Assembly: GCF_947568905.1 (NCBI RefSeq) | Contig: NC_079170.1 | Span: 14,446,001-14,510,000 of the forward strand | Length of the DNA: 64,000 nt | Reading direction: 5' to 3' | Source: Ostrea edulis | Taxonomy: Eukaryota | Shown: piece after piece, positions 42,397-64,000 of the stretch | How positions within the stretch are numbered: the stretch's first letter is position 1 | Layout of the letters: each line of letters opens with the position of its first letter | Notes under the pieces: model-generated | Seen by the model: the letters and a program-made list of their open reading frames with translations, nothing else | Databases searched by the model: none | What the model was told of the DNA's origin: nothing | Made by a program: the position numbers and the translations under genes

Positions 42397-42930
42397 ATGT
42401 CTTGGTGGACGGGCGATATAAGGAATTACTCCAATGAGGAATTCCATGGTTATTTCAGTGATATCCGACTGGTTGCTTTGCGAACGTTGCCGAGAAAACC
42501 ACCAAAGGAGATATTGTCCCTTCTACGGACAACCTCTGTACACTCCCCTTACGCCCAGGCGGAGTCGGCACTCGCAACACCGTCCTCCATCCAAAGTACT
42601 CGCGAGTTTTCCTTTCTACCTGAAACTACAGAATTTGCTTATTCGCCCAACCATGACCTTCATCTTGATCTCGGAACACCGAGCACAACAGAAGAACGAT
42701 TCAGCTACTTTCCTGTCTCTGCCAGGACTCGCCTGCACAAATGGCAGCAACTCAACGATGATGAATCTCATAAATCAAGTGATGGCAGCAAGAAAAGTTC
42801 CATATTCCAGAAATTTGCTTATGGCATGGCGGTATATGTCGCCATTGCTCTATTAGCGCTTATCGTTATTGTTGGGATTTTAGTAACGTCTCTCAAAACA
42901 TTGGACAACAATATCAATGAAATGAAAAAA
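42397..42930 (+). CDS. Tandem M13 (neprilysin/ECE-like) pseudo-peptidase, exon 1: cytoplasmic tail plus type II TM helix
   Basis: accATG after an in-frame stop. 178 codons. Hydrophobic FAYGMAVYVAIALLALIVIVGILVTSL preceded by KK..K. Donor AAA|GTAAGT, phase 0. Confidence 0.85.
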
Positions 42931-43266
42931 GTAAGTATATCAAAATTCATTGATTTAATCAATCATAATGTAACATCAATCATATTGTGAATGGTGTGGA
43001 TTCAAAGAGCTAGGAGGAAATGAAAATAAATTGTTTTCTCAGCGTGTTCAGCATCATCGTTGGAAACTCGGGGCTGATTATAAACTGTGTGCCTTTCTCC
43101 CCCACACGATTCATTAATGAGCGTTACTTTCTCTTTCACTTAGTAGATGAAGCTGCATTTCTTTCTTTCGTCAATTTTTTTTTCATTACCCTGCAGGTTT
43201 TTCTCCATGTGAAAAGCCATCAAGTTGTGTTTCCCTTTTCCGTGCACGGTTCATTAAGCTCCGTTC

Positions 43267-44692
43267 CTTTCTCCCACACAGGGTTGACAAGCAATATTAC
43301 TTTCTCCCACACAGGGTTGACAAGCAATATCCCTTTCTCCCACACAGGGTTGACAAGCAATATTCCTTTCTACAGCATAGGGATGACAAGCAATATTCCT
43401 TTCTACAACACAGGGATGACAAGCAATATTCCTTTCTACAGCACAGGGTTGACAAGCAATATTCCTTTCTCTCACACAGGGTTGACAAGCAATATTCCTT
43501 TCTCCCACACAGGGATGACAAGCAATATTCCTTTCTCCCACACAGGGATGCCAAGCAATATTCTTTTCTACAGCACAGGGTTGAAAAGCAATATCCCTTT
43601 CTCCCACACAGGGTTGACAAGCAATATCCCTTTCTCCCACACAGGGATGACAAGCAATATTCCTTTCTCCAACACAGGGTTGACAAACAATATTTCTTTC
43701 TCCCATACAGGGTTGATAAGCAATATCCCTTTCTCCCACACAGGGTTGACAAGCAATATTCCTTTCTATCTCACAGGGTTGACAAGCAATATTCCTTCCT
43801 GCCACACAGGGTTGATAAGCAATATCCCTTTCTCCCACACAGGGTTGATAAGCAATATCCCTTTCTCCCACACAGGGTTGATAAGTAATATCCCTTTCTC
43901 CCACACAGGGTTGACAAGCAATATTCCTTTCTGTCTCACAGGGTTGACAAGCAATATTTCTTTCTGCCACACAGGGTTGATAAGCAATACCCCTTTCTCC
44001 CACACAGGGTTGATAAGCAATATCCCTTTCTCCCACACAGGGTTGATAAGTAATATCACTTTCTCCCACACAGGGTTGACAAGCAATATTCCTTTCTGTC
44101 TCACAGGGTTGACAAGCAATATTTCTTTCTGCCACACAGGGTTGATAAGCAATACCCCTTTCTCCCACACAGGGTTGATAAGCAATATCCCTTTCTCCCA
44201 CACAGGGTTGATAAGTAATATCACTTTCTCCCACACAGAGTTGACAAGCAATGTCCCTTTCCCCCCTACAGGGTTGACAAGCAATGTCCCTTTCCCCCAT
44301 ACAGGGTTGATAAGCAATGTCCCTTTCCCCCATACAGGGTTGATAAGCAATGTCCCTTTCTCCCACATAGGGTTGACAAGCAATATCCCTTTCTCCCATA
44401 CAGGGTTGACAAGCAATGTCCCTTTCCCCTATACAGGGTTGATAAGCAATGTCCCTTTCCCCCATACAGGGTTGATAAGCACTGTAACTTTCTCCCACAC
44501 AGGGTTGACAAGCAATATCCCTTTCTCCCATACAGGGTTGACAAGCAATGTCCCTTTCTCCCATACAGGGTTGATAAGCAATGTCCCTTTCCCCATTACA
44601 GGGTTGATAAGCAATGTCCCTTTCCCCCATACAGGGTTGATAAGCAATGTCCCTTTCCCCCATACAGGGTTGATAAGCAATATCCATTTCCC
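43267..44692. repeat. 33-bp minisatellite, about 43 copies, in intron 1 of the M13 gene
   Basis: Unit cacacagggttga(c/t)aagcaatatccctttctcc. Degenerate related units extend to about 43110 and 45130. Produces long stop-free frames on both strands. Confidence 0.95.
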
Positions 44693-45872: not shown

Positions 45873-46512
45873 GAGAATATGGCTCCATTAACAGGCAACG
45901 ACCCCCCTCTATATCCTACAACAACAACTAGTAGTGCAATATCAACTAAATTCCAACAACCAAAACCAAATTCTGAGGTAACAAACATGGCGACCACCAC
46001 TACATTAAAAACTACCAATCCAACACCAAAACCAACTGTTCCACAGCCAACAACATCAACAAAAACTGTAACTAAGGTCATCACGGAGTCACCAACGACA
46101 ACAAAAACATCATCAACAACACCATCTCCACCATCAACGATAGCAACTAGTACTACGAGGACGACGAGGACGCCAACAACAACGACAACAGCAAAACCTT
46201 TACCTACCACCACACAGACAACAACAAAGTCGACAACAACAGTAACGACGACACGGACAACCCAATCACCAATTACAACATCGCCACCTTCGACGGACCC
46301 AATGCTCTGTGACAGTTCATTCTGTAGTTCACTAGCGTACGAAATGTTGGGACGAATGAATACGTCGGTGGATCCATGTTCTGATTTTTACAGCTACTCT
46401 TGTGGGGCATGGATCTCAAGCAGGAGACTCTTACTCGAAATGAATGTCATAGAAACTGATAGGAATTCTGTGATGAGTGACGTCAAGTTAAACCTGAAAC
46501 AAAGACTGAAAG
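45873..46512 (+). CDS. M13 gene exon 2: Thr/Pro mucin-like stalk plus start of M13 module 1
   Basis: tttaAG|GAG in phase 0. About 150-aa T/P-rich stalk, then LCDSSFC..LGRMNTSVDPCSDFYSYSCGAW (M13 C....C...DPC.DFY...CG.W signature). Donor AAAG|GTAAAT, phase 1. Confidence 0.92.
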
Positions 46513-46770: not shown

Positions 46771-46878
46771 ATATGCTAAGTGAAACAGTAATTTCAAGTG
46801 ATTCCGATTATATGAAGGCCATCAAACTTCATTTCCAGAGTTGTCTGGACTCAAATACCAGACCGGACAGCAGTCTAA
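46771..46878 (+). CDS. M13 module 1 exon (..KAIKLHFQSCLD..)
   Basis: 108 nt, phase 1/1, ttttcAG| ... |GTATGT. Matches the M13 K...fy.SCl motif. Confidence 0.85.
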
Positions 46879-47505: not shown

Positions 47506-47509
47506 AAAG

Positions 47510-47685
47510 TAACCAAAGATGTGCAGAGTATGCTAGAGAATCTTGGGGTTGATCGCTCCATGACGTCAGTTTTGACACCATCCATGATGCAGTACTCCCT
47601 TTTCTCGGATTATGGCGCCTTTGGTTTCTTTAAGTATGAAATCACGGGAAAAGTTGTTAAAGATACAAAAAGGAGCATCCTTCAG
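47510..47685 (+). CDS. M13 module 1 exon (..MMQYSLFSDYGAFGFFKYEI..SILQ)
   Basis: 176 nt, phase 1/0. Same length as the paralogous exon 62213-62388. Confidence 0.8.
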
Positions 47686-48245
47686 GTTTGCACAAACGTT
47701 TGAGACCATAGTTCAAATTCATTATACATGTATACTTTTTTATGATTAATTCAACCGTAAAACCATCTAACATAATTGAATGTACCACTGTTATACCATG
47801 CAAACCATTTGATTCTAATAGTTCAACTTAATAAGTATTTGTAAATATCTGTTTCACTATAAACAAATTATCTACCTTTTGAACAATTTTATTTTTCGAA
47901 TATCTAATTACAAGCTCAGAATGATACTTTCTGGAAAAAGTGATATTTGAGAAATTCTTGCACATGTATATATGTAAATATTTTCAACATTTTAAATGTG
48001 TATTCCAAGTGGTCTCCCAACTAAATCTTGATTCTGAAAATTAGGTGTCTAATTTGAGAAATCCAACAATAAGGGTACTCGTTAAAACTTCTCCTAATTG
48101 TTGATAGGAATAAAATACTTTTCTATGCCACCAACCACTGAAACAATGGTAAATATCTACCGACTGGATGCTTTAATGTTGTACAACTGGTATAAATATG
48201 ACCATCAATGAACTCGTTCATGATATTTTCACACACTTTTCACAG

Positions 48246-48308
48246 CTTTCTCCACCTGATTTGTATTTACAACAGAGTGTGTATCTTCTCCCGTCTGAAG
48301 ACAACGAG
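48246..48308 (+). CDS. M13 module 1 exon (LSPPDLYLQQSVYLLPSEDNE)
   Basis: 63 nt, phase 0/0, cacAG| ... GAG|GTAAGG. Paralog at 62564-62626. Confidence 0.8.
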
Positions 48309-48384
48309 GTAAGGATATTACAAGAGTAAAGTTTAATGTTGCTAAATCAGATGGCTCTGAAGAAGGATTTCTTAATTTTGTATT

Positions 48385-48538
48385 AATCCTTGTAGGAGTT
48401 ATCCCACCTCTGGTGTGTCCAGGGGTCCGTGTTTGCCCAACTATCTATTTTGTATTGCTTGTAGGAGTTATGAGATTGATCACTGTTCGTTATCTTCACC
48501 TTGCATTGATCTCTGTTCGTTATTTTCACCTTTTCATC
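48385..48538 (+). mobile_element. Penelope-like element 3' end fragment
   Basis: Same family. Shares the variants gcttgtaggag and caccttgcat with the copy at 47247. Confidence 0.75.
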
Positions 48539-50053
48539 TGTTCACTGAAAGTATAGAACATCTGAAACAATGTTTGTCGTTAAAAATACGGTCCGCTTTG
48601 ATCCATTTTGCCCCCAAAGTTCAAGTTAAAAAAAACTTCAATGACGTCACAGTATTGCAAGAACATGGATATCGATTTAGACAGGGATCATTCAATAATT
48701 TCAAAATGTTTCTTGCTGACCCCACCATTTTCAATATCAAGCCACGGCACTGGCGTTGAATAATACATTGTTGGTTTGTTGGATAAAGATGACATTCCTT
48801 GCTTCTCCTCCTCCCTTACCAAAACTGAACCACGATGACGAGTCCGTATGATTTAACTGCCACCTGTCATATCATCTCAGCTTCTGACTTTCCGTGTCGA
48901 CGATTAGAATGAATTGTTTCATGATGTGGTTATTTTCGTACTCACCGCCTGTCATTGAAGAACACTGGTACAGGTCAAAAACCTATCGCCCATGTTCACC
49001 CATGAACAAGAACGATAATCCACGAATATGGCATAGAGGTCAGAAAGACAATGCATTTGAAAATTAGAACTACGTGTATCACATTAGGTCATACACCCTT
49101 GTTTTGCATGTTGTCGTAAATGCACGTGAATTGACTGTTTCGTATATCATGATTCGCACGTGTTGCTATTTACTGAAAGTACAACGTAGCTTGGCATCTG
49201 ATCGGACCTCTCGACTTGGGACATCCAACAGATTTGATATTCTACAAGATCTCGATCTGTCACACATGATCTACTCTTATCTACATCCACAGCATCGTAG
49301 TAGAACACGGTTGTGAGTCCCCGCATGGATACCCGTGGGTAATCAATGATACATCCACAGATAATCTGCATGTTCTTGAGAGGGTACATGTATATATTAC
49401 CTCAAACGTATACAGCACGATTTTAAATCAAGGTAGATAAGATTATGGTTTTGGGGTGCAGAGAGTATATTTTGGAATATTTTAGTGAAAGTATTAATCG
49501 AAGAAACGCATTGGTATTTTACCCCAATGTGTTAGGTACAATTTCAAATGAAGTTTGACGTTCTTTTGACAGATTCAGTAGGAATGACCTTTTTGGCACG
49601 TTTTAATGGACATTTTATTGCTAGAAATATTTCCTTAGCATACTTTAAAATGATTCATGGTCAATAAAGGTGTAGCTACAATTCCTCTGTAGACTTTCTG
49701 GCGAGTTCTGAAGGAATACGAGAGAGTATGAAGAAGGAAATTAGTTGAAACATAAAGAAACATTGCATCATCATGAGTAGATATATCTGCTATCAAACTC
49801 TGGGTCTTTTGGTTACGTTGATATTGTTGAAGACAACTTTACATGACCATGAAACAATTTTAAAACTACTCACTTTTCTAAATATTCCCGACAGGGACGT
49901 AAAACAATATTCAATCAATCAATTAATCAATCATTACTTTTCTGAACGTATTGTAACTTCATTGTCACCACTTATAGCGTCACCATGACGACACATCAAG
50001 TTGAACATGCCCAAATGTGTACGTTCTATGAGGAGATCGGCGGAAGTGATTAT

Positions 50054-50310
50054 TATTTGCTTGGTTCACGTTCTTTCCAGACTTTTTTCACTCCCATTGA
50101 GGCGTTGTAGGTGAAGTGCCACAGAAGAAGACCGCGACACTGGACCTCCATTCCAAGGTCTTATCCGAAAAAACCATGAATTAGCGAAGGAACAATCACA
50201 ACCTATGTTTACGTCTTAGGTTTGACACGGCCATATCATGAGCGGGGCCTGACCTTACAAGCTCCCTGTCACAAAGCGAACTTTCTACTACTGAGCTACC
50301 GCGACCGGTC
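50054..50310 (-). mobile_element. tRNA-derived SINE, degenerate
   Basis: Minus-strand head gaccggtcgcggtagctcagtagtaga (A-box) with a decayed B-box. 3' part gtggcacttcacctaca..gagtgaaaaa resembles the tail region of the SINE at 9615. Confidence 0.65.
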
Positions 50311-51061
50311 GGCTGAAGTGGTCGGGTAGATATGAATAAGCGTTGTTTCATGCAATTCCGCAAATTAAAAAAATGGTTGACAGTAAAACAGACGCAAATC
50401 ATATTGAGATGATCAGATGAGGAAAGGAAAACTGTGTAAAACAGTACTATTTCCGCCATATGTCTTTAGTGACACAGCACCATTACCGTGATGTCCTTGA
50501 CAGTGACCTTGGGTACTCCTTGTAGAGATTGTGATGGAAAATTACAATAGTTTTTTCATAATCCGAAGTAGTCGTAAGATATTATGTCAAATTTACCGCT
50601 TCCTACTGCATTGTCCACTAAATATCATGATATATGGAACAGCGGGGGTTCATGGTGAATAGTAGCCTTAACACGAATGTGCCAAGTTTCGATGGCTCAA
50701 GTATAAGTTCTTTGCAGTCAGAAAATTCTTATCATTCGCATCCATCGGAAAGACAGCATTCCATTGATTTGAATTAATAGTGGATATACAGTTAAAGTAT
50801 ATATTTAACAACAAATTGTTAGACTATTGATCCACATTTTTAAAGATTGAGTTGTACTTTGGGAATGAAATTTGAGAAGTAATTTTTTTTTTCATTTGGT
50901 TAACACGTTTTTATTAAACCAGAGCTATATTCGTATTCTTCATCCTAGAATTACATGGGAGATACTGCCAACGAAAAGTACACTAACTTAAAATCAATAA
51001 GTACTACAGGTGTATGTACAATAATATAATGGTAATGATACAAATGTTCAATAACTTTCAG

Positions 51062-51140
51062 ATTGCCAGGCGGTATTTTGATAGATTAGTCCCGTTGATT
51101 CAGCGTTTCAACAGTAATCTTAGACCGGTTTCTAACCTTG
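51062..51140 (+). CDS. M13 module 1 exon (IARRYFDRLVPLIQRFNSNLRPVSNL)
   Basis: 79 nt, phase 0/1, tttcAG| ... G|GTAAGT. Aligns with the paralog at 62873-62948. Confidence 0.8.
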
Positions 51141-51441
51141 GTAAGTAGGAATCGCAAAATCATGTTTTGTAATACATCACAGGATAGGAATGCGGATTCA
51201 GTTTTCCAATTCATATTCTCTCATTCTGGTGCAAGATTCAGAGTGCAAGTTAAGAAGCAAGTATGGCAAAAATACAAAGTGAAAGTATAACACCGGGGTA
51301 AAATGATCTAGAGTCGTATGACATACTTGTTTGAGCTATATCAAGGTACTATGTGTGACAACTAATCCTGACTTTTAATTATATATAAGGATACATATAT
51401 GCATTGCCTTATTAAGATATTCATACTTTTACAACTACCAG

Positions 51442-51509
51442 ATAATATAGACGGAGAGCTGCGACTGAAAGTTGCAGAAGTCTTCGAATTTGAAAGACAA
51501 ATATCACAG
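51442..51509 (+). CDS. M13 module 1 exon (DNIDGELRLKVAEVFEFERQISQ)
   Basis: 68 nt, phase 1/0. Matches the M13 v..FE..LA motif. Confidence 0.82.
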
Positions 51510-51669
51510 GTAATCTAGGCCTACATGACATTCATCAGAATATTTTTAGATCTCTTTTTCCTTTGTTAATTTTTGTTTATTAAATAAATAATATTGGTTT
51601 AGAATTTAGGTAATTTAAATTTCATAGAATTATTTGTGTTGTTACAGCATGTTAATTCGTGCATTGTAG

Positions 51670-52402
51670 GCTATTCGTGTTGCAAAGTCTTCTAATGAAG
51701 AGAAAGTATCATACTCAGTCAGTGCACTACAAAAGAATCTCCCAAACATTGACTGGACCGTAGCTCTACCGCAGCAACAGTTGTCTTATGACACACCTGT
51801 TCAACTCAACCACCCTAGCTATTTTTCATCTCTGAATGGCATGCTTGGCAGGAACCAACAATCTACACTTGTCATGTACCTTTATATTCGCGCCATTTTA
51901 ACAGGAATCCTTCCATCTGCGCCAAAATCAACTCGCCAATTCATGGATAGTATGTACGATACAGAGACTGCACAAGAATACACGTCAGTAGACTGCTTGG
52001 ATAGTACGCTGAAACTACTTCCAGAGGAAGTGCTTGTGGAGTATACAAGAACATATTCCCAAGATATCAAAAACGTACGGGACTATCTCTCCTCTTTATT
52101 TAGAAATCTAACGGATGAAAGCATCCAGTCTTTTTCTTCTTACCCTGGTTACAGCGACGAAACCAAATTCAGAATGTCCGGGATTTTGTCATCTCTCAAT
52201 CTAGTGAGTGCGCCGATACCAGTGATTCCCTGGACGGTCGTTCTATCCACAAATAACGATGTGCTTCATTTATTTAGAGCTAATTTTGCCCATCAGGCAC
52301 ATGCTTCTCGGTTGATGAACAGAATAGGAGAAGTATATACCGTTCCCGATATACCATGGTATGATGTAGATATCGTGTATGATAAAGAAATCAACACTCT
52401 AG
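51670..52402 (+). CDS. M13 module 1 large exon (LQKNLPNIDW ... DCLDST ... YDVDIVYDKEINTL)
   Basis: 733 nt open, phase 0/1. Contains the P.idW motif, a conserved Cys, and VDIVY at the VNAFY position. Confidence 0.88.
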
Positions 52403-52818
52403 GTAATTTATTTCTTTTTTCTTAATGTAGTTGTTATAGATAGAGAGTTACAATACAGCTCTACAACACATTTCATATATGCATGAACGAATATTACAAG
52501 ATTAATTCCGGACAAAATTATTACAGAAACCTCAAGGTTTTGAGGACATGGTTTTAATAGCTGCTTTTTAAAGATCACACTGTAAATGTTATTTCGATTA
52601 TTTTGATTTATAATACTAAAGTCTAACAAATTAAATGTGATTTAAAAATTTTCCTCTTCAACATTGTACTGTTTTATCAAATAAAGGGCAGATAACTTTA
52701 TATTTTCCTATGAAATACTGAGGATGTGTATAGAAAGTATAAAGTATCATGGAATAATCTTTTATGCGCAAACGGCAGAGCAATAATTATCATACCATAA
52801 TAAGATATTAAAGCTATA

Positions 52819-53310
52819 CATGAAAGGTGAAGATAACGAACAGTGATCAATCTCATAAGTCCTATAAGGAATACAAAGTAGAGAGTTGGGCAAACACGGA
52901 CCCCTGGACATACCAGGGATGGGACCAGGTGCCTAGGAGGAGTAAGCATCCCCTGTCGACCGGTCACATCCGCCGTGAGCTCTATACCTTGATCAGGTAA
53001 ATCAGTTATCCCTTGTAAACATCAGTGTGCCAAGAACGTGAAAGGCCTAAAAATCGGTATGAAAGAAGTCAGACAACATTTGACCCAATGATAGGTTATA
53101 CCGTATTGACAAGATCAATACACCTACCATATAATTTGCGAAATATTGACTTTAAACGAGAGTGTTGAATCCCATCTAACATCATTTTGTTTGTCAGTAG
53201 CCTATCTCGATTTAAAAACTGATCATAAGCAGAACAAGCTCTTGCGTATCGAATCAGTTGAAAGATATAAACACCATATGCAGGTGATAATGAAATATTT
53301 CTAATATGAT
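52819..53310 (-). mobile_element. Penelope-like element, RT C-terminus plus 3' end
   Basis: Translation NISLSPAYGVYIFQLIRYARACSAYDQFLNR..LLTNK..SRLKS.FRK.YGR, followed by the family 3' UTR. Confidence 0.82.
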
Positions 53311-53501
53311 GATGAGTAATTGGTAGATATTCGGAATAAATCACACTTTTCTACCATCACATCATGCCATTTTTGGACGGCTACTAGTACATTTAATCGT
53401 TTTCTCTGAATTTGATACTGTGATTATCGTCTAAAGTGCACCTCATCATTCGAGGAAACATTTACCACCAGAAACTAATCCACATGTTCTTGTTTTTTAA
53501 G

Positions 53502-53609
53502 GAATGGCGTATGGAATCCTAAGTTGGAAAACAAACCTGAAACCAGAGTTTCCCTTCATGTCCACTGTTGGTCTACTTCTATCAGAGAGAGTTACAGACG
53601 CAATTTATG
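53502..53609 (+). CDS. M13 module 1 active-site exon with the zinc motif replaced
   Basis: ttttaAG| GMAYGILSWKTNLKPEFPFMSTVGLLLSERVTDAIY G|GTATGT. 108 nt, phase 1/1. Aligns to FPAGIL....GGIGxVIGHEITHGFD. Confidence 0.78.
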
Positions 53610-55625
53610 GTATGTTGTCATCCGGAATTTGCATCTTTTAGGGAAACAAAAGATCACTGACTTCAGAATAAGAACTTTGAAAAATTCTAAAATTAACATT
53701 AAGTGCTGATAACAACTATTGTTGCATATGATATTTGAAAATGCCTGCACATTTGAATCGATAAATGCATTATCTGAGAGTGGTATGCAATGGATATTAA
53801 CTCTGCTCTGACACTAGAACTACCATTAGCATTGAGTAGAATTGTATTCACATTTAGAAACGTTCCTCGGAGCAGGCACTTTTTTACTCTTCATACACTG
53901 AAGGACCAAAAGTTTGAAAGGCAAACGAATGTTTTATTGGGGCAAGAATTTGTACGCTGGTTGAGGGTCTACTGACTAGATTTGATGATATAGTGTTGTA
54001 TCAGATTTCCTTGCGAATATTTTTTGCACACATCACAAATCTTTATGCATTTTTTTTATTGTATGTACATGTATGTAAAACGTCCGAACATGTGACAGAC
54101 TATATTTGGATTCAACAATATTGGTCACCCTTTTGTCTCTCTGATTGGGAATTCTGTTTGAAATGAAAAATAGATTTAATGTTTAACACTCCGTATCCTC
54201 TGATAAAACATAGGTTTGTCGCATTTTGAATATTCTATTGATATTACAAATTTGCAAACATTTTCCTTTCTTCGTTGTGTGCCACTTAATTGTCTTAAAA
54301 TACTTTTTAAGAATTGATTTTTTAAAGAAAACTTTCCTGATTTAATGTTTTCTCTCTCGAACATGCTAATCTGTTTAAATGGCTAGTATCTCGCAGCAGC
54401 AGTGAATTGCCCATTCATTATTAACCGAGGTCTTTCGGTAAATTTTGTAACCTTTTCTATTGACTTTCAATCTAACTGGGAATCGTAATGTATGTTTTAA
54501 TGGATACAGAGCAACTTTCATGCAATGATTCTAAATGTCTAATTGAAAACGATGTTTCATATACGCCGTGATGTTGAAGAGTCTTCGTTAGTGCGCTCCA
54601 CTAATATTTAGATGAGGTCTGCAATAAGAGTAAGTATTACATATATGCCGTTGAAGATGCCATATATTCATCCAAAGTACTTTATTCGCCTGATATTTCA
54701 TCTGAAAGAATCCACTAGGGAGACAAGAGGCGAAAATGCTAGAGAGAGAGGGGGAAAAAATCCAAAGGGAATAAATTCATTAAATGCTACAATTCAAATA
54801 TAACACACCTCTCATGATACAAATTTTCCCTACGAAAATGCAAATGTAACAAAAACAAAGTAAATAGATACAACCAGATAAATGAGTAGATAAATCAATC
54901 AATCATAATAGAATAATTGATAATAATGATAAATCAGCACGGCTTGTGTATTCTTTATCGTCACTCTGTGTCCATTTATAAAACTCGATCTGGATTCCTT
55001 AGGTTAATTGTTCGTCAATACGGGGCCTCATTCTGATGCTCCTGTGAATACACACTATATAACCAATTTAGATCGCGTGCAGAAGATATTTGTAAATTAC
55101 ATCGAAACTACCAACACATTTGGATATTTAGTTCAATTTATATTGAGTATGGCAGGAAAAACAGACGCAGTAATCGATCTTTAAGAATATGAGTTCTAGA
55201 TACGAGAAATTGCACGAAGGACCCTCTTTTTGAAATGTAGGCTTAGGCAGACTTTTGTTTTATCTTTGGTATCAGAGAAACGCTGAAATATACATGACTT
55301 GAATGTGTAACTATTCTCATACCGATAGTTTCAGAAAAAAGAATTATATCCCATCTGACCAAAACCACTTAATAGATTTGATTAAACCATTTACTCTATA
55401 TGAAATTAATCCACTGAGTTCCTGAAAACATCGTGCATGCATAAATAATTCGTGTGGTCGTGTGTATTCAGTCAAAGAAATGAATTGGAGAATAGATCAT
55501 ACACAATTGACCAGACGGCGATAAAGATAGCAATTATCGGATTATTCATTTCAAACAATTATCTGCATATAGGAAGTAAGACTTTGCTGATATCGACTCT
55601 CGACTATGAAATGACTACTTTGTAG

Positions 55626-55735
55626 GGTCACTCGACATTCAGTCTGCGGTCGATGGTTACTGGAGTGATGGTTCTTTGAGGCATTTTCAGGACAAACGCG
55701 ACTGCTTCATGAATCAACTGTTTGAGAAAAGAACT
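55626..55735 (+). CDS. M13 module 1 exon (..DGYWSDGSLRHFQDKRDCFMNQL..)
   Basis: Phase 1/0, tgtAG| ... ACT|GTAAGT (alternative phase-0 end at 55759). Matches the WW....F.....C...Q motif. Confidence 0.8.
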
Positions 55736-55899
55736 GTAAGTCTAACCGGTAGACCTCTAGTTAAGGAAGCTCCATACTTGCATTCTCAAGGTTCAACGTA
55801 GAAAACTATATTAATTTCATACTTTTTGTTTAATGCAATCGATGATTAAAGGAAATACCAATGTTGCTACCTTATTAAAGATTACAGACATACATATAC

Positions 55900-55948
<49 letters not shown>

Positions 55949-55951
<3 letters not shown>

Positions 55952-56525
55952 TGATCACCTGCTTTAATGCCGCACATCGCCAAAAAGTTCAAAGTCCCGT
56001 TTTCCTCGCTATGTAAAAACCCGTTATATTGCCATCCCCTGCATACCACCATCCGCCAACCTATTTACAGGTACTATTTGGTCAATTACCATTATAATCA
56101 CCACCGCTAATTATCGCCAATCAACGGCAGGACAATTTCAGTGAGCAGGCTTAGGCAATTATCCGCTATTAGTTCTCAAGGTATCAAAGTTTGGAGCAGA
56201 TAATAAGTTATGTAAATCATATTCAACTGAGTTCAAATATGCAGTATTGTTTTTGAAATCCAAGTATGGCGGATACACCGAAGTCTAAGCGTGTTGTACA
56301 TAAAACTAAAACTGGAAATCATTAAATACCCCTACCATTACGAGTCATTTACGATCACTGGACGCTGGGATTACCCAGGCATTCAAAGCACGATGTAGTA
56401 GATAAAATTTGATTGATTTCTTATGACAGCTGTACATATACCCCCTCCCCCGATATAATGCCACCCCCGTTATAATGCCAAAATTGCCGAGGTACAAATG
56501 TTGGCGTTATAACGGGGGATCACTG
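55949..56525. mobile_element. Tc1/mariner-like MITE in a (TA)n tract
   Basis: TIR CAGTGATCACCTGCTTTAATGCC / GGCGTTATAACGGGGGATCACTG, flanked by TA on both sides. Confidence 0.75.
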
Positions 56526-56535
56526 TATATATTTA

Positions 56536-56580
56536 AATCACTAACGCTTTCTGGATTTTAACATCCATCCTCAGGTGAAT
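56536..56580 (-). ncRNA. Minimal type I hammerhead ribozyme motif
   Basis: AUUCAC-CUGAGGA-UGGAU(GUUAAA)AUCCA-GAAA-GCGUUA-GUGAUU. Intact core, 5-bp stem II, stem I UCAC/GUGA, self-complementary stem III, NUH triplet UUA. Confidence 0.65.
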
Positions 56581-56734
56581 ACATGTACCTTTAAATGCTG
56601 AACACGTCTCAATATAAACTCCTCAAATAACAACAAACAACCAAATAGATTCATTTTTGATGAGTACTTGTTTATTCAATGCATATCCGAATAGATAATT
56701 TTATGTTTTGTTTCCCAAAATTCATGCCTCTAAT

Positions 56735-58426
56735 TTCACATTTGGCAACCCAACTTACACTCCAGATTCCCTTTCCACAATGAGTCTTTAATCTTCAAAA
56801 CCACGTGTCAGTTTAAAACACATTTAATATCCCAATTAATGGAGGGAATGAATATGAGTTACCAAACGTATACTGAATTCCAAAACTTTACAAAACCCTT
56901 ACGAAAAGAGATAAATTGCAGGATCCAGCAAATGATATACCAAGCCCATATCTTTACTCCTCACCAAAACATCAACTGCTATAAAGGAGAAACCTAAGAC
57001 TTATTTTGCTAGAAATGGTGTAAATCGAACGTGGATTCTGATGGTTTTCAAAGAACGTTTAGTAAAACCTTTCCAAAAACAACATCATCAAAGCGTTAAA
57101 TGTTTCCACGCTTCACACCATGTCATGATAAATTAGAGACTAGGGGCATCTTTTTGGCATCATAGAGAGATGCGTCTTGAATAAAAATGGAACTCGGAAA
57201 AATTAACATTTGTTATGAGTCATTCAAAATTAATTTGTTAAAAACCATTCAGATTCTACGAACAAGTACTCTGAAATTGATAGTAAAAAGATGTTGGATT
57301 TCCTCACTGACAATATCTACATACATTGTAGTTTTGGCGCAATCAGTTCTTTCAACAGGCTATTGAATTCAAGCGGACACGAATTGCGCTCCTTTAATAG
57401 CTGATCTATTTTTGCATTCTTATGAGGCAAAATGTACATAAAAACTCCTACATACATCTATATCCCCGTGAAATCGAACTGAACGACACCATAGAATCTT
57501 CTATATCTGTTTCGTATTTGGATGTATTAATGAACATAGATGTCATCGGCACACTAACAACTCAACTTTATGACAGACTTTATCTTCTCCGTCGTCAACT
57601 GGCTATATCTATGTAGAAATAGTCCATTATCACCTGCTTATGAAAGGTGAAGATAACCAACAGTGGTCAATCTCATAACTCCTATAAGCAATACAAAATA
57701 GATAGTTGGGCAAAAACGGACCTCTGAACACACCAGAGGTGGGATCAGGTGCCTAGGAGGAAGAGGCACCCTCTGCTGATTAGTCAAACCCGTCGTGAGC
57801 CCTATATCTTGATCAGGTAAATGGAGTTATCCGTAGTCAAAATCAGTGTGTCAAGAACGGTCTAACAATCGGTATGAAACACATCAGACAGCATTTGACC
57901 CAATGACAGGTTGTATTGGCAAACTAGATCGTTATAACGATCATAGAATTAGCGAAATGCTGACTTTAATCGAGACTGTTGAAATCCCTGAACCACTTGT
58001 TTGTCAGTAGCTTGCTTTTGTCTCTCAACTGATTTGATATGCGAGGGCATGTTATACGTATGATCAGTTTTTGAATAGAGACAATACTGGAAAATAAGTG
58101 AATGTTACAGGAGTTACAAGTATCTTGTTTAAAGTCAGCATTTCCAAAATTCTTATACAATTTATCTAATACAATCTCCCATTAGGTCGAATGCATTCTA
58201 ACGTTTTCATACCAATGGTTACGCCATTCTTTATATACTGATTTTTATTACGGATTACTCCGATTATCTGACCAAGATATAAAGGTTCAACAAGGGGATG
58301 TTTACCTTCCTAGACACCTGACCGACCTCTGATGTTTCCATGGATCTGTGTTCGTCCTATTCTGAGTGTTGTATTCTTTATGAGATTTATGAGATTGTTC
58401 ACTGTACCTTATCGTCATCATTTCAT
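56735..58426 (+). mobile_element. Old Penelope-like RT remnant interrupted by a younger antisense copy (57640-58014)
   Basis: Plus-strand remnants GNPTYT..NEYELP..IPKL..NCAPLIADLFL.SYEA..QLYD..PLSPAY | insert | SQLI.YARAC..DQFLNR, then the 3' end ...atttcat. Confidence 0.75.
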
Positions 58427-58782
58427 GTTACAAATTCACGGTGATTTATGTAGACAAAACCACAAAATAAAATTAAAAATCTATCCACAAAGCATTTGGT
58501 CATCTAGAAATTCATGAAGTTTAAACTTTTTCAATCTTTTAATGAACATGTCCCACTTTTAATGATTTAAGTAGTTAATATACAAGTTGCAAACTTTGAT
58601 TTAGAACAAGAGGACATTTTCCCCCTATGTTTGTACATTTACCTTTATTCAGAAGAAGTGGAACATGTTGCGCTACGAAAGACAATTGCACTACTAAATA
58701 AACAACATTTTGAAAATAGATATTATTTGACCTATGATTAATGTGTATATGTACTTATTATGAGTTGCCTTTCATTTATTAG

Positions 58783-58848
58783 GAGACTGGTATATACAAA
58801 ACGAAGCAAGTGATGTCAGGACATGCTGGACTATACATAGTAATGCAG
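58783..58848 (+). CDS. M13 module 1 exon (ETGIYKTKQVMSGHAGLYIVMQ; GENIAD region)
   Basis: 66 nt, phase 0/0, ttattAG| ... CAG|GTATGG. Aligns to G..TLGENIADNGGL. Confidence 0.7.
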
Positions 58849-59399
58849 GTATGGCTGACATATTCAATTAGAGTTGTTCAAATGCTTATGAGAACATACA
58901 CATATAAATGAAAGAAGGCGTTGATGCAAATAGAAGTACAAAATATAATACTACAATACATATGCATGTATTGTAAGCATATTGTATTATCAATCACTTG
59001 TATTTCGCGAGATTTTATTTCATTAATCCTAATTACTCTTACCAAATTTTTATTTGTAAGACAGTTAATTTTCCTCATACCATAAAAATAAGGTTTTAAT
59101 GGCTATATCTTAATAAATCCATAGTAATGAACCTTTTTTTTAATTAAGCGTTAGCGGAAAATCATTTCCCGACAGAATAATTATGGGAGCAGTAACAAAA
59201 ATAATTTACAGTCACAACGGAAAAGAAATAAGGACAAAAATAATGTATGCACGAGACTGAGGCAACATTTGGACAGGTTAAAACCCTCATTGCATGTCAT
59301 ATATTTCTTTATTCCAATGGTATCTCCAAATACTTAACGTTACAATCTAAACATGGCCTTGGCCATTCTCAATGACTTTCAACAATATCGCGTGTATAT

Positions 59400-59568
59400 A
59401 CATGATCAAGATATAGGGCTCACGAAGAGTGTGGCCGGTCGACAAGGGGTGCTTACTCCTGATCCCTGGTATATCCAGGGGTCCGTGTTTGCTCAACTCT
59501 CTATTTTGTATTCCTTTTGGGAATTGATGAGTGAGATTGATCACTGTGCGTTATATTCGCCTCTTATA
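59400..59568 (+). mobile_element. Penelope-like element 3' end fragment
   Basis: gatatagggctcacg...ccaggggtccgtgtttgc...gagattgatcactg, same family. Confidence 0.7.
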
Positions 59569-60051: not shown

Positions 60052-60150
60052 GAACAAAAACGTTTGCTTCAGAATAGAATGATCCAAAGATACCTATTCC
60101 CATTCCTGTCCCTTCATTCTGAACAGCTGTTTTACCTGTCGATGACTCAG
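60052..60150 (+). CDS. M13 module 1 exon (..LFPFLSLHSEQLFYLSMTQ)
   Basis: 99 nt, phase 0/0. Matches LPGL...EQLFF..fAQ. Confidence 0.85.
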
Positions 60151-60342: not shown

Positions 60343-60392
60343 GAGTTGTGCAAAATGAATGAAGAAGGAGACGTTTTATCCAACAAATTGAG
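60343..60392 (+). CDS. M13 module 1 exon (ELCKMNEEGDVLSNKLR)
   Basis: 50 nt, phase 0/2. Corresponds to the WC...D.HSP...R segment. Confidence 0.78.
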
Positions 60393-60590: not shown

Positions 60591-61588
60591 ATGGAACACA
60601 GTTCTGATGAACGACGTGACTTTTGCAAAGGCCTTTGAATGTCCTCTTGGTTCCCACATGAACCCACCCTATAAATGTCATCTTTTCCAGCAAACGAATT
60701 ATACAATTCCACCGACGACACCGGCACTTCCTACAACTACAACAACAACAATCACCACACAAGTTACAACTCAACGAACAACGACAACATCTCCAAAACC
60801 GACGACAACGACCACTCCAAAACCAACGACGACAACGACTACTCCAAAACCGACAACTACTACTCCAAGGCCGACGACAACGACCACTTCAAAACCGACG
60901 ACAACGACTACTCCAAAACCGACAACTACTACTACTACTCCAAGGCCGACGACAACGACCACTTCAAAACCGACGACAACGACTACTCCAAAACCGACGA
61001 CAACGACTACTACTCCAAAACCAACGACAACGACAACAACTCCAAAACCGACGACAACGACAACAACTCCAAAACCGACGACAACAACGACTACTCCAAA
61101 ACCGACGACAACAACGACTACTCCAAAACCGACGACAACGACTACTCTAAAACCGACGACGACAATAACGACTACTCCAAAACCGACGACTACTCCAAAA
61201 CCGACGACGACAACTCCAAAACCGACAACAACAACTACTACTTCAATACCAACAACTCTAATTCCATCCACAACAACAACCACGACGTCAAACCCAATCC
61301 CGACGACAACAACTCAACAGAGTGTAGTCTCTACTACTATAAATACTCCGTCTACAACTTCCGATGTCAATCAACTACAAACCTGTCAATCAGAATTCTG
61401 TTTCTCTTTAGCTTTTCTGATTTCTTCCCGCTCGGACGAATATGTAGATCCTTGCAACGATTTTTACCAGTATGCATGCGGTGGATGGGTATCTGGAAGA
61501 GAAGCTTTATTGGCTTTAAACTTTTACAACGAGTCTAGAAACTCTATCATAGAAGATGTACACTTTAATTTCAGACAAGAATTAAAAG
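60591..61588 (+). CDS. Fusion exon: C-terminus of M13 module 1, (PKPTTTTT)n linker, start of M13 module 2
   Basis: cttccAG|A, phase 2. FAKAFECPLGSHMNPPYKCHLF continues stop-free through a ~230-aa T/P linker into CQSEFC..YVDPCNDFYQYACGGW. Donor AAAG|GTATGT, phase 1. Confidence 0.92.
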
Positions 61589-61913: not shown

Positions 61914-62021
61914 CAATGGTAGAAAGAAACACAACCGATGACGACAGTGAATATCTACAACTGATAAAACTTCATTACCAGAGTTGTCTATTGTCCAATA
62001 ACCCACAGCAAGTGCAATCAG
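61914..62021 (+). CDS. M13 module 2 exon (..LIKLHYQSCLLS..)
   Basis: 108 nt, phase 1/1. Paralog of 46771-46878. Confidence 0.85.
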
Positions 62022-62212
62022 GTGAAGGACAGCTACATGTATAAACTGTTCAAGTGCAAATTAACGGCTAAATAAGCAACCCACTATAGCTTCCCACAAT
62101 TTTATAGTGGACAGTATTGCACTGTATGCAATATCTTTTGATGTGTTTTTAAAATGAGTAATAATCATTCTCGGTATGCATTTTTGAAACATGCTCTACT
62201 TATTGTTGTCAG

Positions 62213-62388
62213 TCACAAACGATATGCAGCTTCTGTTGGAAATATTGGAAATGGGGAATGACCTGAAATCCTACATGGGGGCAGCCAACATGCACTTAGT
62301 AGTGAGTGCGGACATGGGTGGTTCGGGATTATTCGACTACAGGGTAATACAAACGGCAGTGGACAACACAACGACAAACATATTGCAG
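62213..62388 (+). CDS. M13 module 2 exon (..DMGGSGLFDYRV..NILQ)
   Basis: 176 nt, phase 1/0. Paralog of 47510-47685. Confidence 0.82.
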
Positions 62389-62390
62389 GT

Positions 62391-62424
<34 letters not shown>

Positions 62425-62563
62425 ATTTTTCATATATCATGCTATCTATCACATGTTGTGGTTTCATTGTTATGTATGTGTGTTACATTGCAAAGTTTAT
62501 GATGAGAATGCTGGTAACAGGGGACGTAATAATTCACTAACCATTCCTACATCACTATTTCAG

Positions 62564-62626
62564 CTCTCTCCATCGAATTTATATCTAAAGGATGATGCTT
62601 ATGTAGCGCCATTTGAAAGCAATAAG
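62564..62626 (+). CDS. M13 module 2 exon (LSPSNLYLKDDAYVAPFESNK)
   Basis: 63 nt, phase 0/0, donor AAG|GTGAGT. Confidence 0.82.
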
Positions 62627-62872
62627 GTGAGTGTAGTGCAACATGCGTAACATACACGTAAACGTGAGCATAAAAAGAAAGTTACGTACTAAACACGTTG
62701 GAGGTGACATTTTCTCTTTGATATTATTTCAAGCACTTGTTGTCTCTGCAATGAGAAGGAATTTAATTTTGACTTCAAATAATGCAGCCGAAATTGATGG
62801 AGCATACAATGAGAGTGACGCTCGATTATATACAAGACAAAGTGTGGGTTAACATATGTGTGTGTTTTGCAG

Positions 62873-62948
62873 ATAGCACAGAAGTACATTGAGAGAATTG
62901 TGCCTGTTTTGCAGAAAGTTAATCTGAATTTACGCCCACAAAATGCAG
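62873..62948 (+). CDS. M13 module 2 exon (IAQKYIERIVPVLQKVNLNLRPQNA)
   Basis: 76 nt, phase 0/1. Confidence 0.8.
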
Positions 62949-63119
62949 GTTTGGTTTGCATATACTGGAATATGACATGAATATGAAACATCATCTGTAT
63001 CAAAGTTATCGATGCATCCCAAAATGAATTAGACTATATGCATGGCCAATTTTCTATGTTTCGTTTCTTGTTTGTGAGCGAAAATTCCTGAAATTGTTGG
63101 GTTTTTTTATTTTTGGTAG

Positions 63120-63190
63120 ATGACAACATCACGGAAGCTCTGATTGAGAGACTGGAGGATGTGTTCGCGTTTGAGCAAGAATTGGCCAAG
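63120..63190 (+). CDS. M13 module 2 exon (DDNITEALIERLEDVFAFEQELAK)
   Basis: 71 nt, phase 1/0, donor AAG|GTTAGT. Confidence 0.85.
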
Positions 63191-63552
63191 GTTAGTGTTA
63201 CCTTAGATTGTGACAGACCTCGTGGAAGAGAAGCCGTGATACTTGTTTTATTTGAAATTCACATATAAAAGCCGTAAAAGATATCCACAACTATGCTTCA
63301 TCTTTTTTTGTTTTACCCCTGCGTCATTTTTATCATCTGCCCCCCCCCTTCTTTTTTTACCCCTGCACTAATTTTTACCCCTGCCCTATTTTCACCCTTG
63401 TCCTATTTATGATTACGTATACTTTATATGACTCTGTACATGGATGATCTTCCTAAGTCAAAACATCCCACAGAACGAGTTTGAAGTTTATCCACACATT
63501 TCAATAATCACACTGTCTTTGATTATCCCATTTACATATGTCTTTCTTTCAG

Positions 63553-64000
63553 GCTATTCAGTTCGGCGGATTTGAACCTGACATTGATATCAAAACTGAA
63601 GAACTGGAACAAAGATATCCAAACATTGACTGGGTGTACATGTTACCCTATCAACAGACCTTTTCCGAAACTCCCATTCGAATCGTTAATCCCTCCTTCT
63701 TTCAGACCCTCGACCAGTTATTTAACAGTACAAACGAGGATGTCATCTCCATGTACATTTACACCAAAGCTGTCCTCACAGCTCTTCTGCCTTACGCCCC
63801 ACTGGCAATACGAAAGAGTATGGATGGTATCTACAATAACGATACCAGTGAGCCGTTTTCTACTGGCCATTGTCTGGACTCTACACTTTCCATGTTAAAA
63901 GACGAATTCCACGAGGAATACAGAATAAAATACAGAGATCAAATCGACTTTCAAACATCCTACTATTCAAACCTATCTACAACCATAAAGGAAACATTAA
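63553..64000 (+). CDS. M13 module 2 large exon, truncated by the window end
   Basis: ctttcAG|AIQFGG...LEQRYPNIDWVYMLP...MYIYTKAVLTALLPYAP...GHCLDSTL..., open to base 64000. Paralog of 51670-52402. Confidence 0.88.

What the first reader, a model, noticed from the sequence alone, without database searches (positions are those of the whole stretch)
53502..53609. Zinc-binding HExxH replaced by ERVTD; other catalytic determinants of module 1 also lost
The exon reads AYGIL...STVGLLLS-ERVTD-AIY, aligning to PAGIL...GGIGxVIG-HEITH-GFD (ERVTD at 53585-53599). Elsewhere VNAFY becomes VDIVY (exon 51670-52402), GENIAD with the third Zn ligand becomes KQVMSG (58783-58848), and the transition-state His of D.HSP becomes DVLS (60343-60392). 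Structural Cys, frames and splice sites are intact. Combined loss of chemistry with a preserved fold suggests a functional pseudoenzyme rather than a decaying pseudogene.
Basis: partly seen in the sequence, partly recalled or inferred. Interest (0 to 1): 0.75.

Follow-up and report, generated by a model that had tools for sequence, protein, structure and literature searches.

The report
Inactive neprilysin-like module in bivalve gene
This bivalve gene encodes a membrane-anchored, mucin-stalked protein with at least two neprilysin-like (M13) modules that have lost the zinc-binding and catalytic residues yet are kept by selection, so it is a non-cutting relative of a peptidase, a kind already known from insects.

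Summary
Exon 53502-53609 reads as quoted, with ERVTD at 53585-53599. Aligned through a profile of bivalve relatives to solved neprilysin, E, R and D sit where the two zinc-binding histidines and the catalytic glutamate belong. VDIVY replaces the substrate-binding Asn motif. No His remains where the transition-state His belongs. The third zinc ligand appears replaced by Q, placed by position only.

Fourteen exons (42397-61588) join with GT-AG sites and consistent phases. No HExxH occurs in any + frame of 42000-64000.

Contigs from other species carry the same exons at 55-74% protein identity with unalignable introns. They read EKITD, and dN/dS is about 0.12-0.19.

The loss is not special to module 1. 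Module 2 reads KEIAS on same-species contigs that run past the window end. Relatives in Pecten, Mactra and Mercenaria also lack both histidines.

So this is a selected pseudo-peptidase of an old bivalve M13 lineage, not a decaying pseudogene. Inactive M13 homologues are well known in Drosophila. What is new is the bivalve lineage and the layout: membrane anchor, Thr/Pro-rich stalk, module 1, Thr/Pro-rich linker, module 2. The last exon of module 1, the linker and the start of module 2 lie in one open exon. Function is inferred (peptide binding without cleavage), and no transcript evidence was available.

The parts
42397..42930 (+). Exon 1: predicted start codon, about 144-aa cytoplasmic tail and the signal-anchor helix (42829-42885)
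   Evidence: Matches the N-terminus of the Mactra relative P0019. The best 19-aa window has mean Kyte-Doolittle 3.14. Strong donor at 42930 with phase 0.
43266..44690 (.). 33-bp x 43 minisatellite inside predicted intron 1; whether it is coding is unresolved
   Evidence: Tandem Repeats Finder reports 90% matches. It is open in several frames on both strands, and no relative has a match to it.
45873..46512 (+). Exon 2: Thr/Ser/Pro-rich stalk (45873-46307, 64% T+S+P), then the start of M13-like module 1 with four conserved Cys
   Evidence: Pfam Peptidase_M13_N positions 1-38. Profile A2 positions 76-265, E 6.5e-15. Splice sites; composition.
46771..46878 (+). Exon 3
   Evidence: 74% protein identity to L001; phases 2/1.
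47510..47685 (+). Exon 4
   Evidence: Conserved in L001 and L003; phases 2/0.
48246..48308 (+). Exon 5
   Evidence: tblastx blocks in L001 and L003. The module 2 counterpart, 62564-62626, has the same length.
51062..51140 (+). Exon 6
   Evidence: tblastx blocks in L001, L002 and L003; phases 0/1.
51442..51509 (+). Exon 7
   Evidence: Conserved in L001-L003; phases 2/0.
51670..52402 (+). Exon 8: second half of the M13 N-domain and entry into the catalytic-type domain; VDIVY stands where neprilysin has its Asn542 motif
   Evidence: Pfam PF05649, E 5.7e-11, 42.9 bits. 60-66% identical fragments from other species all keep VDIVY. Alignment to the profile.
53502..53609 (+). Exon 9: former zinc-motif exon; ERVTD at 53585-53599 in place of HExxH
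   Evidence: Orthologous exons L001 4588-4692 and L002 1639-1743 are 71% identical and read EKITD.
55626..55735 (+). Exon 10, with a conserved Cys
   Evidence: Profile positions 749-780; conserved in L001 and L002.
58783..58848 (+). Exon 11: KQVMSG where the third zinc ligand motif belongs (placed by position)
   Evidence: The L002 4141-4209 ortholog is 55-57% identical (55% over all 22 codons) and reads RRVMSA.
60052..60150 (+). Exon 12, not quoted in the finding; the acceptor could instead be 60010 or 60073, all in the same phase
   Evidence: Weak profile hit at 809-838. The donor at 60150 and the phases fit the neighbouring exons. No ortholog contig reaches this far.
60343..60392 (+). Exon 13: conserved Cys, then DVLS where the transition-state His motif belongs; the exon has no His
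60591..61588 (+). Exon 14, one open frame: C-terminal end of module 1 (to about 60705, ending C-H-L-F instead of CxxW), a 226-aa Thr/Pro linker (60706-61383, 80% T+S+P), then the start of module 2
   Evidence: Pfam Peptidase_M13 positions 172-205 and Peptidase_M13_N positions 1-15 in one ORF. Profile hits; splice sites; composition.
61914..64000 (+). Module 2 exons 61914-62021, about 62233-62394, 62564-62626, 62873-62948, 63120-63190 and 63553 to the window end (cut); intron positions and phases match module 1
   Evidence: Pfam PF05649, E 1.3e-8, for 63523-63999.

Best explanation
Window 42.4-64 kb (+) holds the 5' part of one bivalve gene. It encodes a type II membrane protein: a cytoplasmic tail, one anchor helix, a Thr/Ser/Pro-rich (mucin-like) stalk, an M13 (neprilysin-like) module, a second Thr/Pro linker, and a second M13-like module that continues beyond the window. 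SHOWN: module 1 is homologous to neprilysin along its length. It has lost both zinc-binding histidines, the catalytic glutamate, the substrate-binding asparagine and the transition-state histidine. It has very probably also lost the third zinc ligand and the C-terminal Trp. Its exons and splice sites are intact. Orthologous exons in other species are under purifying selection and keep the degenerate motif. Module 2 and the relatives in three other bivalve genera also lack both zinc-binding histidines. INFERRED: the protein cannot act as a zinc peptidase. It most likely uses the retained two-domain M13 shell as a binding module, holding or presenting peptides or other ligands at the cell surface on extended glycosylated stalks without cutting them, as proposed for Drosophila Nepl15 and shown for PHEX. 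In module 1 the E, R/K and D side chains at the former metal site may pair with each other and replace the metal structurally. That last point is speculative.
For: Homology: Pfam hits, and colinear profile hits for positions 13-891. The profile of relatives matches neprilysin at E 1e-31 and ECE-1 at E 1e-28. Residue losses. No HExxH occurs in any + frame of 42000-64000. Intact model: 13 GT-AG introns with chained phases. Selection: the same exons occur in L001, L002 and L003 at 55-74% protein identity, and only exon blocks align. Window against L002 gives pN 0.22 and pS 0.71 over 336 codons, with omega about 0.12 and dS saturated. L001 against L002 gives omega 0.14 over 314 codons. The zinc-motif exon shows 4 synonymous and 0 non-synonymous differences. 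Lineage-wide loss: Pecten XP_033746308, Mactra KAL4227004 and Mercenaria XP_053377916. Module 2 reads KEIAS on contigs L004/L005, which overlap window 61164-64000 at 98.4%. Anchor and stalks. Precedent for binding without cleavage: PMC7822871.
Against: There is no transcript or protein evidence for this gene, so expression, the skipping of the minisatellite and the read-through from module 1 into module 2 are all predicted from DNA only. The third-ligand assignment rests on position, not on a scored alignment. No usable 3D model was obtained: AlphaFold2 on the Mactra relative gave mean pLDDT 38. The binding function is an analogy, not a result. The substrate-backbone Asn is also lost, which weakens the case for canonical peptide binding. 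dS to the more distant orthologs is saturated, so those omega values are only approximate upper-range estimates.
Confidence: 0.72

Rival explanations
1. Decaying pseudogene: a dead copy of a neprilysin gene that is drifting.
For: All catalytic motifs are gone. The short C-domain exons fail Pfam one by one. Introns are long and full of repeats.
Against: There are no stops or frame breaks in 14 exons, and all splice sites are canonical with chained phases. Exons are conserved across species while introns are not. Omega is 0.12-0.19. The same loss is kept in annotated genes of three other bivalve genera.
Confidence: 0.04
2. Still an enzyme: the carboxylates E and D at the two histidine positions bind a different metal, and the module catalyses hydrolysis or another reaction.
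For: E and D are possible metal ligands, and both are conserved between the window and L001/L002.
Against: The general-base Glu is Arg or Lys in module 1 orthologs. The third ligand position is Q or R. No His is present for transition-state stabilisation. The residues at these positions differ freely across the lineage: E/N, E/K, S/I, K/S and S/L.
Confidence: 0.07
3. Annotation artefact: the true transcript uses another exon that supplies HExxH, or the quoted exon is not an exon.
For: No RNA data were available. Exons 11-13 are short, and exon 12's acceptor is ambiguous.
Against: There is no HExxH in any + frame across 42000-64000, against 0.66 expected from shuffles. The exon is conserved with sharp boundaries and the same splice phase in L001 and L002. 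The annotated relatives also have no HExxH.
Confidence: 0.03
4. Two neighbouring genes rather than one two-module protein: module 1 ends and module 2 starts as a separate transcript, and the open frame across the linker is a by-product of the stop-free Thr/Pro repeat.
For: The repeat is open in three frames. The known relatives with full models are single-module and end just after the last Cys motif. No RNA evidence exists.
Against: There is no stop between the last Cys motif of module 1 and the linker, which follows it directly. Module 2 has no anchor or signal exon of its own between 60.7 and 61.4 kb. Its stalk-plus-start segment is the counterpart of exon 2, which in module 1 is an internal exon.
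Confidence: 0.2

Closest known systems
Drosophila neprilysin-like (Nepl) proteins, e.g. Nepl15 (PMC8223033, PMC7822871, PMC2259306)
   Same: They are M13 homologues that lack HExxH, ENIAD, NAY/FY and/or CxxW. The changes at the catalytic site are conserved among species. They are expressed, and they are proposed to bind rather than cut peptides. In Nepl15, zinc ligands are replaced by Arg and the catalytic Glu by Gln, much as here.
   Different: [quoted passage not shown] This protein is membrane-anchored, has mucin-like stalks and carries at least two modules. The loss is almost certainly independent: this is a bivalve lineage, and only 15 related proteins were found in 1.84 billion. Orthology was not tested.
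Human neprilysin and ECE-1 (PDB 4cth, 1dmt, 3dwb)
   Same: Both have type II membrane topology, the two-domain M13 architecture and ten aligned Cys. The profile of the bivalve lineage matches them at E 1e-31 and E 1e-28 over both domains.
   Different: All catalytic and zinc-binding residues are replaced. The sequence is so diverged that single exons do not hit any PDB chain. It also has a long Thr/Pro stalk and tandem modules.
Predicted bivalve proteins XP_033746308 (Pecten maximus, 'neprilysin-2-like'), KAL4227004 (Mactra antiquata, hypothetical) and XP_053377916 (Mercenaria mercenaria, 'neprilysin-1-like')
   Same: They belong to the same divergent lineage, at 21-27% identity in exon 8. The full-length Pecten and Mactra models have a Thr/Ser/Pro stalk before the M13 modules; the Mercenaria model (519 aa) is N-terminally truncated and shows no stalk. 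Pecten and Mactra pass both Pfam M13 thresholds; Mercenaria passes the N-domain threshold only (C-domain 19.6 bits against a cut-off of 24.5). None has the two histidines.
   Different: Their models are single-module and end soon after the last Cys motif. Several keep the catalytic Glu, which module 1 has replaced. They are machine-named as neprilysins, with no note that the active site is missing.
PHEX (mammalian M13 member), as cited in PMC7822871
   Same: It has been shown to bind substrates and protect them from other peptidases, a role that needs no catalytic residues. This is the model for a binding function.
   Different: PHEX keeps its zinc site. No relationship beyond family membership is implied.

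Membership tests
Peptidase family M13 (neprilysin family), as homologue | Peptidase_M13_N domain (PF05649) | tested here: met
   Exon 8 scores 42.9 bits against a cut-off of 32, E 5.7e-11. The module 2 exon scores 35.1 bits. Exon 2 covers profile positions 1-38.
Peptidase family M13 (neprilysin family), as homologue | Peptidase_M13 C-terminal domain (PF01431) | tested here: inconclusive
   Searched exon by exon, only exon 14 hits (19 bits against a cut-off of 24.5, positions 172-205). Exons 9-13 give nothing alone. The relatives P0013 and P0019 pass (32.9 and 29.9 bits), and window exons 9, 10, 12, 13 and 14 are colinear with their profile. The joined protein was not searched.
Peptidase family M13 (neprilysin family), as homologue | Conserved disulfide Cys pattern | tested here: met
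   Ten Cys in exons 2 (four), 3, 8, 10, 13 and 14 (two) fall on columns where neprilysin has Cys.
Peptidase family M13 (neprilysin family), as homologue | Type II membrane anchor near the N-terminus | tested here: met
   There is a single strongly hydrophobic 19-aa window (mean KD 3.14) at 42829-42885, after a roughly 144-aa tail. No dedicated topology predictor was available.
Active M13 peptidase (the 'Nep' class of PMC8223033) | HExxH zinc-binding and catalytic motif | tested here: not met
   ERVTD stands at the aligned columns. No HExxH occurs in any + frame of the gene region.
Active M13 peptidase (the 'Nep' class of PMC8223033) | ENIAD(xGG) motif carrying the third zinc ligand | tested here: not met
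   Q-V-M-S-G sits at the expected place in exon 11, and the ortholog has R there. Placement is by position and a G-L anchor, not by a scored alignment.
Active M13 peptidase (the 'Nep' class of PMC8223033) | NAY/FY substrate-binding motif | tested here: not met
   D-I-V-Y stands at the aligned columns and is invariant in seven related fragments.
Active M13 peptidase (the 'Nep' class of PMC8223033) | C-terminal CxxW | tested here: not met
   Module 1 reads C-H-L-F and then runs on into the linker instead of ending.
Catalytically inactive M13 homologues ('neprilysin-like', non-peptidase homologues) | M13 homology with one or more of the four motifs missing, and the gene maintained | tested here: met
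   Homology and motif losses are as in the rows above. Maintenance is shown by intact exons, omega 0.12-0.19 and lineage-wide retention.
Catalytically inactive M13 homologues ('neprilysin-like', non-peptidase homologues) | Expression of the gene | not testable with these tools
   No transcript collection could be searched. The related contigs found are genomic, because they contain the introns.
Catalytically inactive M13 homologues ('neprilysin-like', non-peptidase homologues) | Orthology to the Drosophila Nepl genes | not tested
   No tree was built. The big search returned only bivalve-type sequences, which argues for an independent origin.

The most novel reading that the evidence does not exclude
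Bivalves carry an old, lineage-specific class of cell-surface proteins in which two or more catalytically dead neprilysin shells are strung on mucin-like stalks from a single membrane anchor. Such a protein would act as a multivalent peptide trap or presenter at epithelial surfaces such as gill, mantle or gut. It might buffer neuropeptides or capture foreign or antimicrobial peptides. Tandem M13 modules in one polypeptide have not, to my knowledge, been described.
Probability: 0.25. Interest if true: 0.6.

Novelty: new member of a known kind. Interest (0 to 1): 0.42.

Why it matters
Catalytically dead relatives of peptidases are common but poorly understood. For the M13 family the only studied cases are in flies. 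This adds an independent, apparently ancient case: it is shared by scallop, clam and mussel lineages, with clear purifying selection. It also has a different layout (membrane-anchored, mucin-stalked, tandem modules). It shows that database names such as 'neprilysin-2-like' for these bivalve genes imply an activity the proteins cannot have. If the tandem layout is confirmed by transcripts, it would be a natural system for asking what an M13 shell does when it no longer cuts.

Tried and rejected
1. phmmer of exon 8 against PDB sequences gave only chance interleukin-2 hits (E > 0.1). The lineage is too diverged for single-sequence detection, so I used a profile of relatives instead.

2. Pfam on the short C-domain exons one by one gave nothing except exon 14.

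3. tblastn with the distant full-length relatives found only the large exons. The closer contigs L001-L003 defined the small ones.

4. A MAFFT alignment mixing full-length proteins with the short window exons (A3) scattered the short pieces and was discarded. Nothing rests on it.

5. AlphaFold2 on the Mactra relative with a 15-row alignment gave mean pLDDT 38 and pTM 0.29. I ran no fold search on it because matches would be meaningless. The second word search found no further relatives to deepen the alignment.

6. A literature search for these proteins in bivalves found nothing specific. Sample accessions traced only L007/L008, to South China Sea cold-seep metagenomes (PMC9357000). The species of the window was not identified.

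7. The whole window was scanned on both strands with the lineage profile. No further M13-like gene lies in 1-42 kb, and the ten longest ORFs there have no Pfam family.

8. Left out: joining the predicted exons into one protein for Pfam, PDB, homology or structure tools.

Full report
**1. The observation**

The interval 53502-53609 is preceded by AG (53500-01) and followed by GT (53610-11). Read from 53504, it gives a 35-codon open stretch ending in S-E-R-V-T-D-A-I-Y, with ERVTD at 53585-53599. The other three quoted stretches are also present as written:
- VDIVY at the end of 51670-52402
- KQVMSG in 58783-58848
- DVLS in 60343-60392

**2. What the gene is**

Pfam places exon 8 (51670-52402) in Peptidase_M13_N at positions 207-364 (E 5.7e-11, 42.9 bits, above the cut-off of 32). 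It also finds three further pieces:
- the start of that domain in 45816-46547
- its middle again in 63523-63999
- inside one 374-codon open frame (60550-61671), both the last 34 positions of the catalytic-type Peptidase_M13 domain and the first 15 positions of a new M13_N domain

So two M13-like modules follow each other on the + strand. A scan of the whole window on both strands finds no others.

**3. Relatives**

The word search with exon 8 returned only short gene calls on small contigs, 60-66% identical.

The exhaustive HMMER search found just 15 proteins at E <= 0.001 among 1.84 billion representatives. The named ones are:
- Pecten maximus XP_033746308, 'neprilysin-2-like'
- Mactra antiquata KAL4227004, hypothetical protein
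- Mercenaria mercenaria XP_053377916, 'neprilysin-1-like'

The Pecten and Mactra models carry both Pfam M13 domains above threshold; the Mercenaria model passes only for the N-domain, its C-domain scoring 19.6 bits against a cut-off of 24.5. A profile of four of these relatives matches solved neprilysin (4cth, 1dmt and others) at E 1e-31 and ECE-1 (3dwb) at 1e-28, across both domains.

This is therefore a very divergent, bivalve-restricted branch of the M13 family. No canonical M13 enzyme was close enough to be hit by the single exon.

**4. Gene model**

I combined three sources: profile hits, protein-level matches to three contigs from other species (L001, L002, L003), and a listing of AG/GT sites with their phases. 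This gave 14 exons:

| Exon | Coordinates |
|---|---|
| 1 | 42397-42930 |
| 2 | 45873-46512 |
| 3 | 46771-46878 |
| 4 | 47510-47685 |
| 5 | 48246-48308 |
| 6 | 51062-51140 |
| 7 | 51442-51509 |
| 8 | 51670-52402 |
| 9 | 53502-53609 |
| 10 | 55626-55735 |
| 11 | 58783-58848 |
| 12 | 60052-60150 |
| 13 | 60343-60392 |
| 14 | 60591-61588 |

- Every junction is GT-AG, and the leftover bases of each exon add up with the next.
- Exon 12 is an addition. It has only a weak profile hit, and its acceptor could be 60010 or 60073 in the same phase.
- Exon 1 matches the N-terminus of the Mactra protein. It carries one strongly hydrophobic helix at 42829-42885 with mean hydropathy 3.14. That is the type II anchor expected of the family.
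- Exon 2 opens with 145 residues that are 64% Thr+Ser+Pro.
- Exon 14 contains a 226-residue linker that is 80% Thr+Ser+Pro, lying between the end of module 1 and the start of module 2.
- Module 2's exons have the same order and phases as module 1's, and in one case the same length, but much shorter introns. The modules therefore arose by duplication of a whole module. They are about 34% identical in exon 8, so the duplication is old.

**5. The catalytic positions**

I used only letters printed by the tools. One search aligns the lineage profile to neprilysin, and one search aligns the window exons to the same profile. Positions are numbered as in PMC2259306.

| Neprilysin position | Role | Module 1 | Basis |
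|---|---|---|---|
| Asn542 | substrate binding | D | scored alignment |
| His583 | zinc ligand | E | scored alignment |
| Glu584 | catalytic Glu | R | scored alignment |
| His587 | zinc ligand | D | scored alignment |
| Glu646 | third zinc ligand | Q | position only |
| Asp650 | third-ligand motif | G | position only |
| His711 | transition-state His | absent | no His in exon 13 or early exon 14 |
| C-terminal CxxW | folding and maturation | C-H-L-F | profile alignment |

- Exon 11 gave no scored alignment of its own. Its residues are placed by their position between exons 10 and 12 and by a shared G-L pair. No Glu lies within three residues of the expected place, and the ortholog has R there.
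- The transition-state His is absent in any register.
- After C-H-L-F the frame continues into the linker.
- All four motifs that PMC8223033 uses to define an active neprilysin are therefore missing.
- Ten Cys align with neprilysin Cys.
- No H-E-x-x-H occurs in any + frame between 42000 and 64000, so no hidden alternative exon in the window could restore the site.

**6. Alive or decaying**

Contigs L001 and L002 are about 90% identical to each other at the DNA level. L003 comes from a further species. All carry the same exons in the same order, at 55-74% protein identity to the window. Only exon blocks can be aligned between them and the window.
- All seven related fragments keep VDIVY.
- The zinc-motif exon is 71% identical and reads EKITD.
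- Window against L002 (336 codons, counted exon by exon): pN 0.22 against pS 0.71, omega about 0.12 with dS saturated.
- L001 against L002, the unsaturated pair (314 codons): dS 0.082, dN 0.012, omega 0.14.
- The zinc-motif exon between L001 and L002 has 4 synonymous and no non-synonymous differences.

This is purifying selection, including on the remnants of the catalytic domain.

**7. The loss is lineage-wide**

The five columns of the former HExxH read as follows:

| Sequence | Reading |
|---|---|
| Window module 1 | ERVTD |
| Orthologs L001/L002 | EKITD |
| Mactra | EEILN |
| Mercenaria | EEFIK |
| Pecten | SELVI |
| Paralog from cold-seep metagenomes (L007) | SNVIL |
| Module 2 | KEIAS |

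It does not.
- Contigs L004/L005 overlap window 61164-64000 at 98.4% and extend 1.1 kb further. Their counterpart of exon 9 gives the module 2 reading.
- Both histidines are absent everywhere. The middle Glu survives in several members but not in module 1.
- Pecten belongs to Pteriomorphia, and Mactra and Mercenaria to Imparidentia (my own taxonomic knowledge). The loss therefore most likely predates the split of the main bivalve groups. I did not build a tree, so a single origin is inferred, not shown.

**8. How it probably works**

*Shown:* the protein cannot bind zinc or activate water in the way of an M13 peptidase, and it is nevertheless conserved.

*Inferred:* the M13 shell is retained as a binding module. 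It is held away from the membrane on extended stalks that are probably O-glycosylated, and it is present at least twice per chain.

The nearest functional precedents are the Drosophila neprilysin-like proteins and PHEX:
- Twenty-one of the 28 fly M13 genes lack these motifs, and all are expressed (PMC8223033).
- In Nepl15, zinc ligands have become Arg and the catalytic Glu has become Gln. These changes are conserved across the genus, and modelling suggests that it binds and sequesters peptides (PMC7822871).
- PHEX is cited in the same paper as binding substrates and shielding them from cleavage.

In module 1 the former metal site now holds an acid, a base and an acid (E, R/K, D), all conserved in the orthologs. 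A salt-bridge cluster replacing the metal is an attractive reading, but it is untested.

**9. Limits and steps left out**

- I found no transcript evidence. Expression, the skipping of the 33-bp minisatellite in intron 1 and the read-through from module 1 to module 2 are predictions from DNA.
- The structure test failed. AlphaFold2 on the Mactra relative with 15 aligned rows gave mean pLDDT 38, so I ran no fold search.
As a result, the C-terminal Pfam domain could not be scored as a whole for the window's own protein.
- No contig looked human, and the window has no N stretches.
- One slip: early in my reasoning I recalled a few letters around the neprilysin zinc motif from memory.

**10. Verdict**

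The thing itself is a new, independently evolved member of a known kind: catalytically inactive M13 homologues. Its less ordinary features are its age and restriction to bivalves, its extreme divergence, and the predicted tandem, mucin-linked layout. The interest is moderate, not high.

Noticed in passing
window 43266-44690: A 33-bp unit repeated about 43 times (90% matches). It is open in several frames on both strands and lies in predicted intron 1, between the anchor exon and the stalk exon. Whether any of it is coding is unknown, and no relative matches it.
   Followed up: partly
window 30583-30766, 36479-36696, 47200-47560, 48401-48537, 52816-53038, 57640-57860, 58287-58417, 59399-59562: An interspersed repeat of roughly 220 bp, with at least eight copies in both orientations at 76-90% identity, mostly in introns of the gene. 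It looks like a SINE or MITE.
   Followed up: partly
window 60791-61239: The linker between the two modules is itself a tandem array. The period is about 27 nt with about 18 copies, encoding Thr-rich units ending in P-K-P or P-R-P. Length variation between individuals would be expected.
   Followed up: no
window 61588-63553 against 46512-51670: Exons 2 to 8 span about 5.2 kb in module 1 but about 2 kb in module 2. In the orthologous contig L001 the intron after exon 8 is about 160 bp, against 1.1 kb in the window. Intron size in this gene is very labile, largely through repeat insertions.
   Followed up: no
L004/L005/L006 against window 61164-64000: Contigs from three sequencing runs of apparently the same species differ from the window by about 1.6% at the DNA level. 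All three end about 810 bp after module 2's large exon, which suggests a repeat or assembly break there.
   Followed up: no
window 1-42000: No M13-like sequence was found on either strand, and the ten longest open frames have no Pfam family. Tandem repeats with periods 71/42/21 lie at 40224-40444. The upstream 42 kb looks gene-poor.
   Followed up: partly
L007 and L008 (ENA ERZ23498523, ERZ23498860): A paralog or ortholog of this lineage, 27% identical in exon 8, sits on contigs from South China Sea cold-seep metagenomes (PMC9357000). It presumably comes from host DNA of seep bivalves in the samples, and it also lacks the zinc motif.
   Followed up: partly
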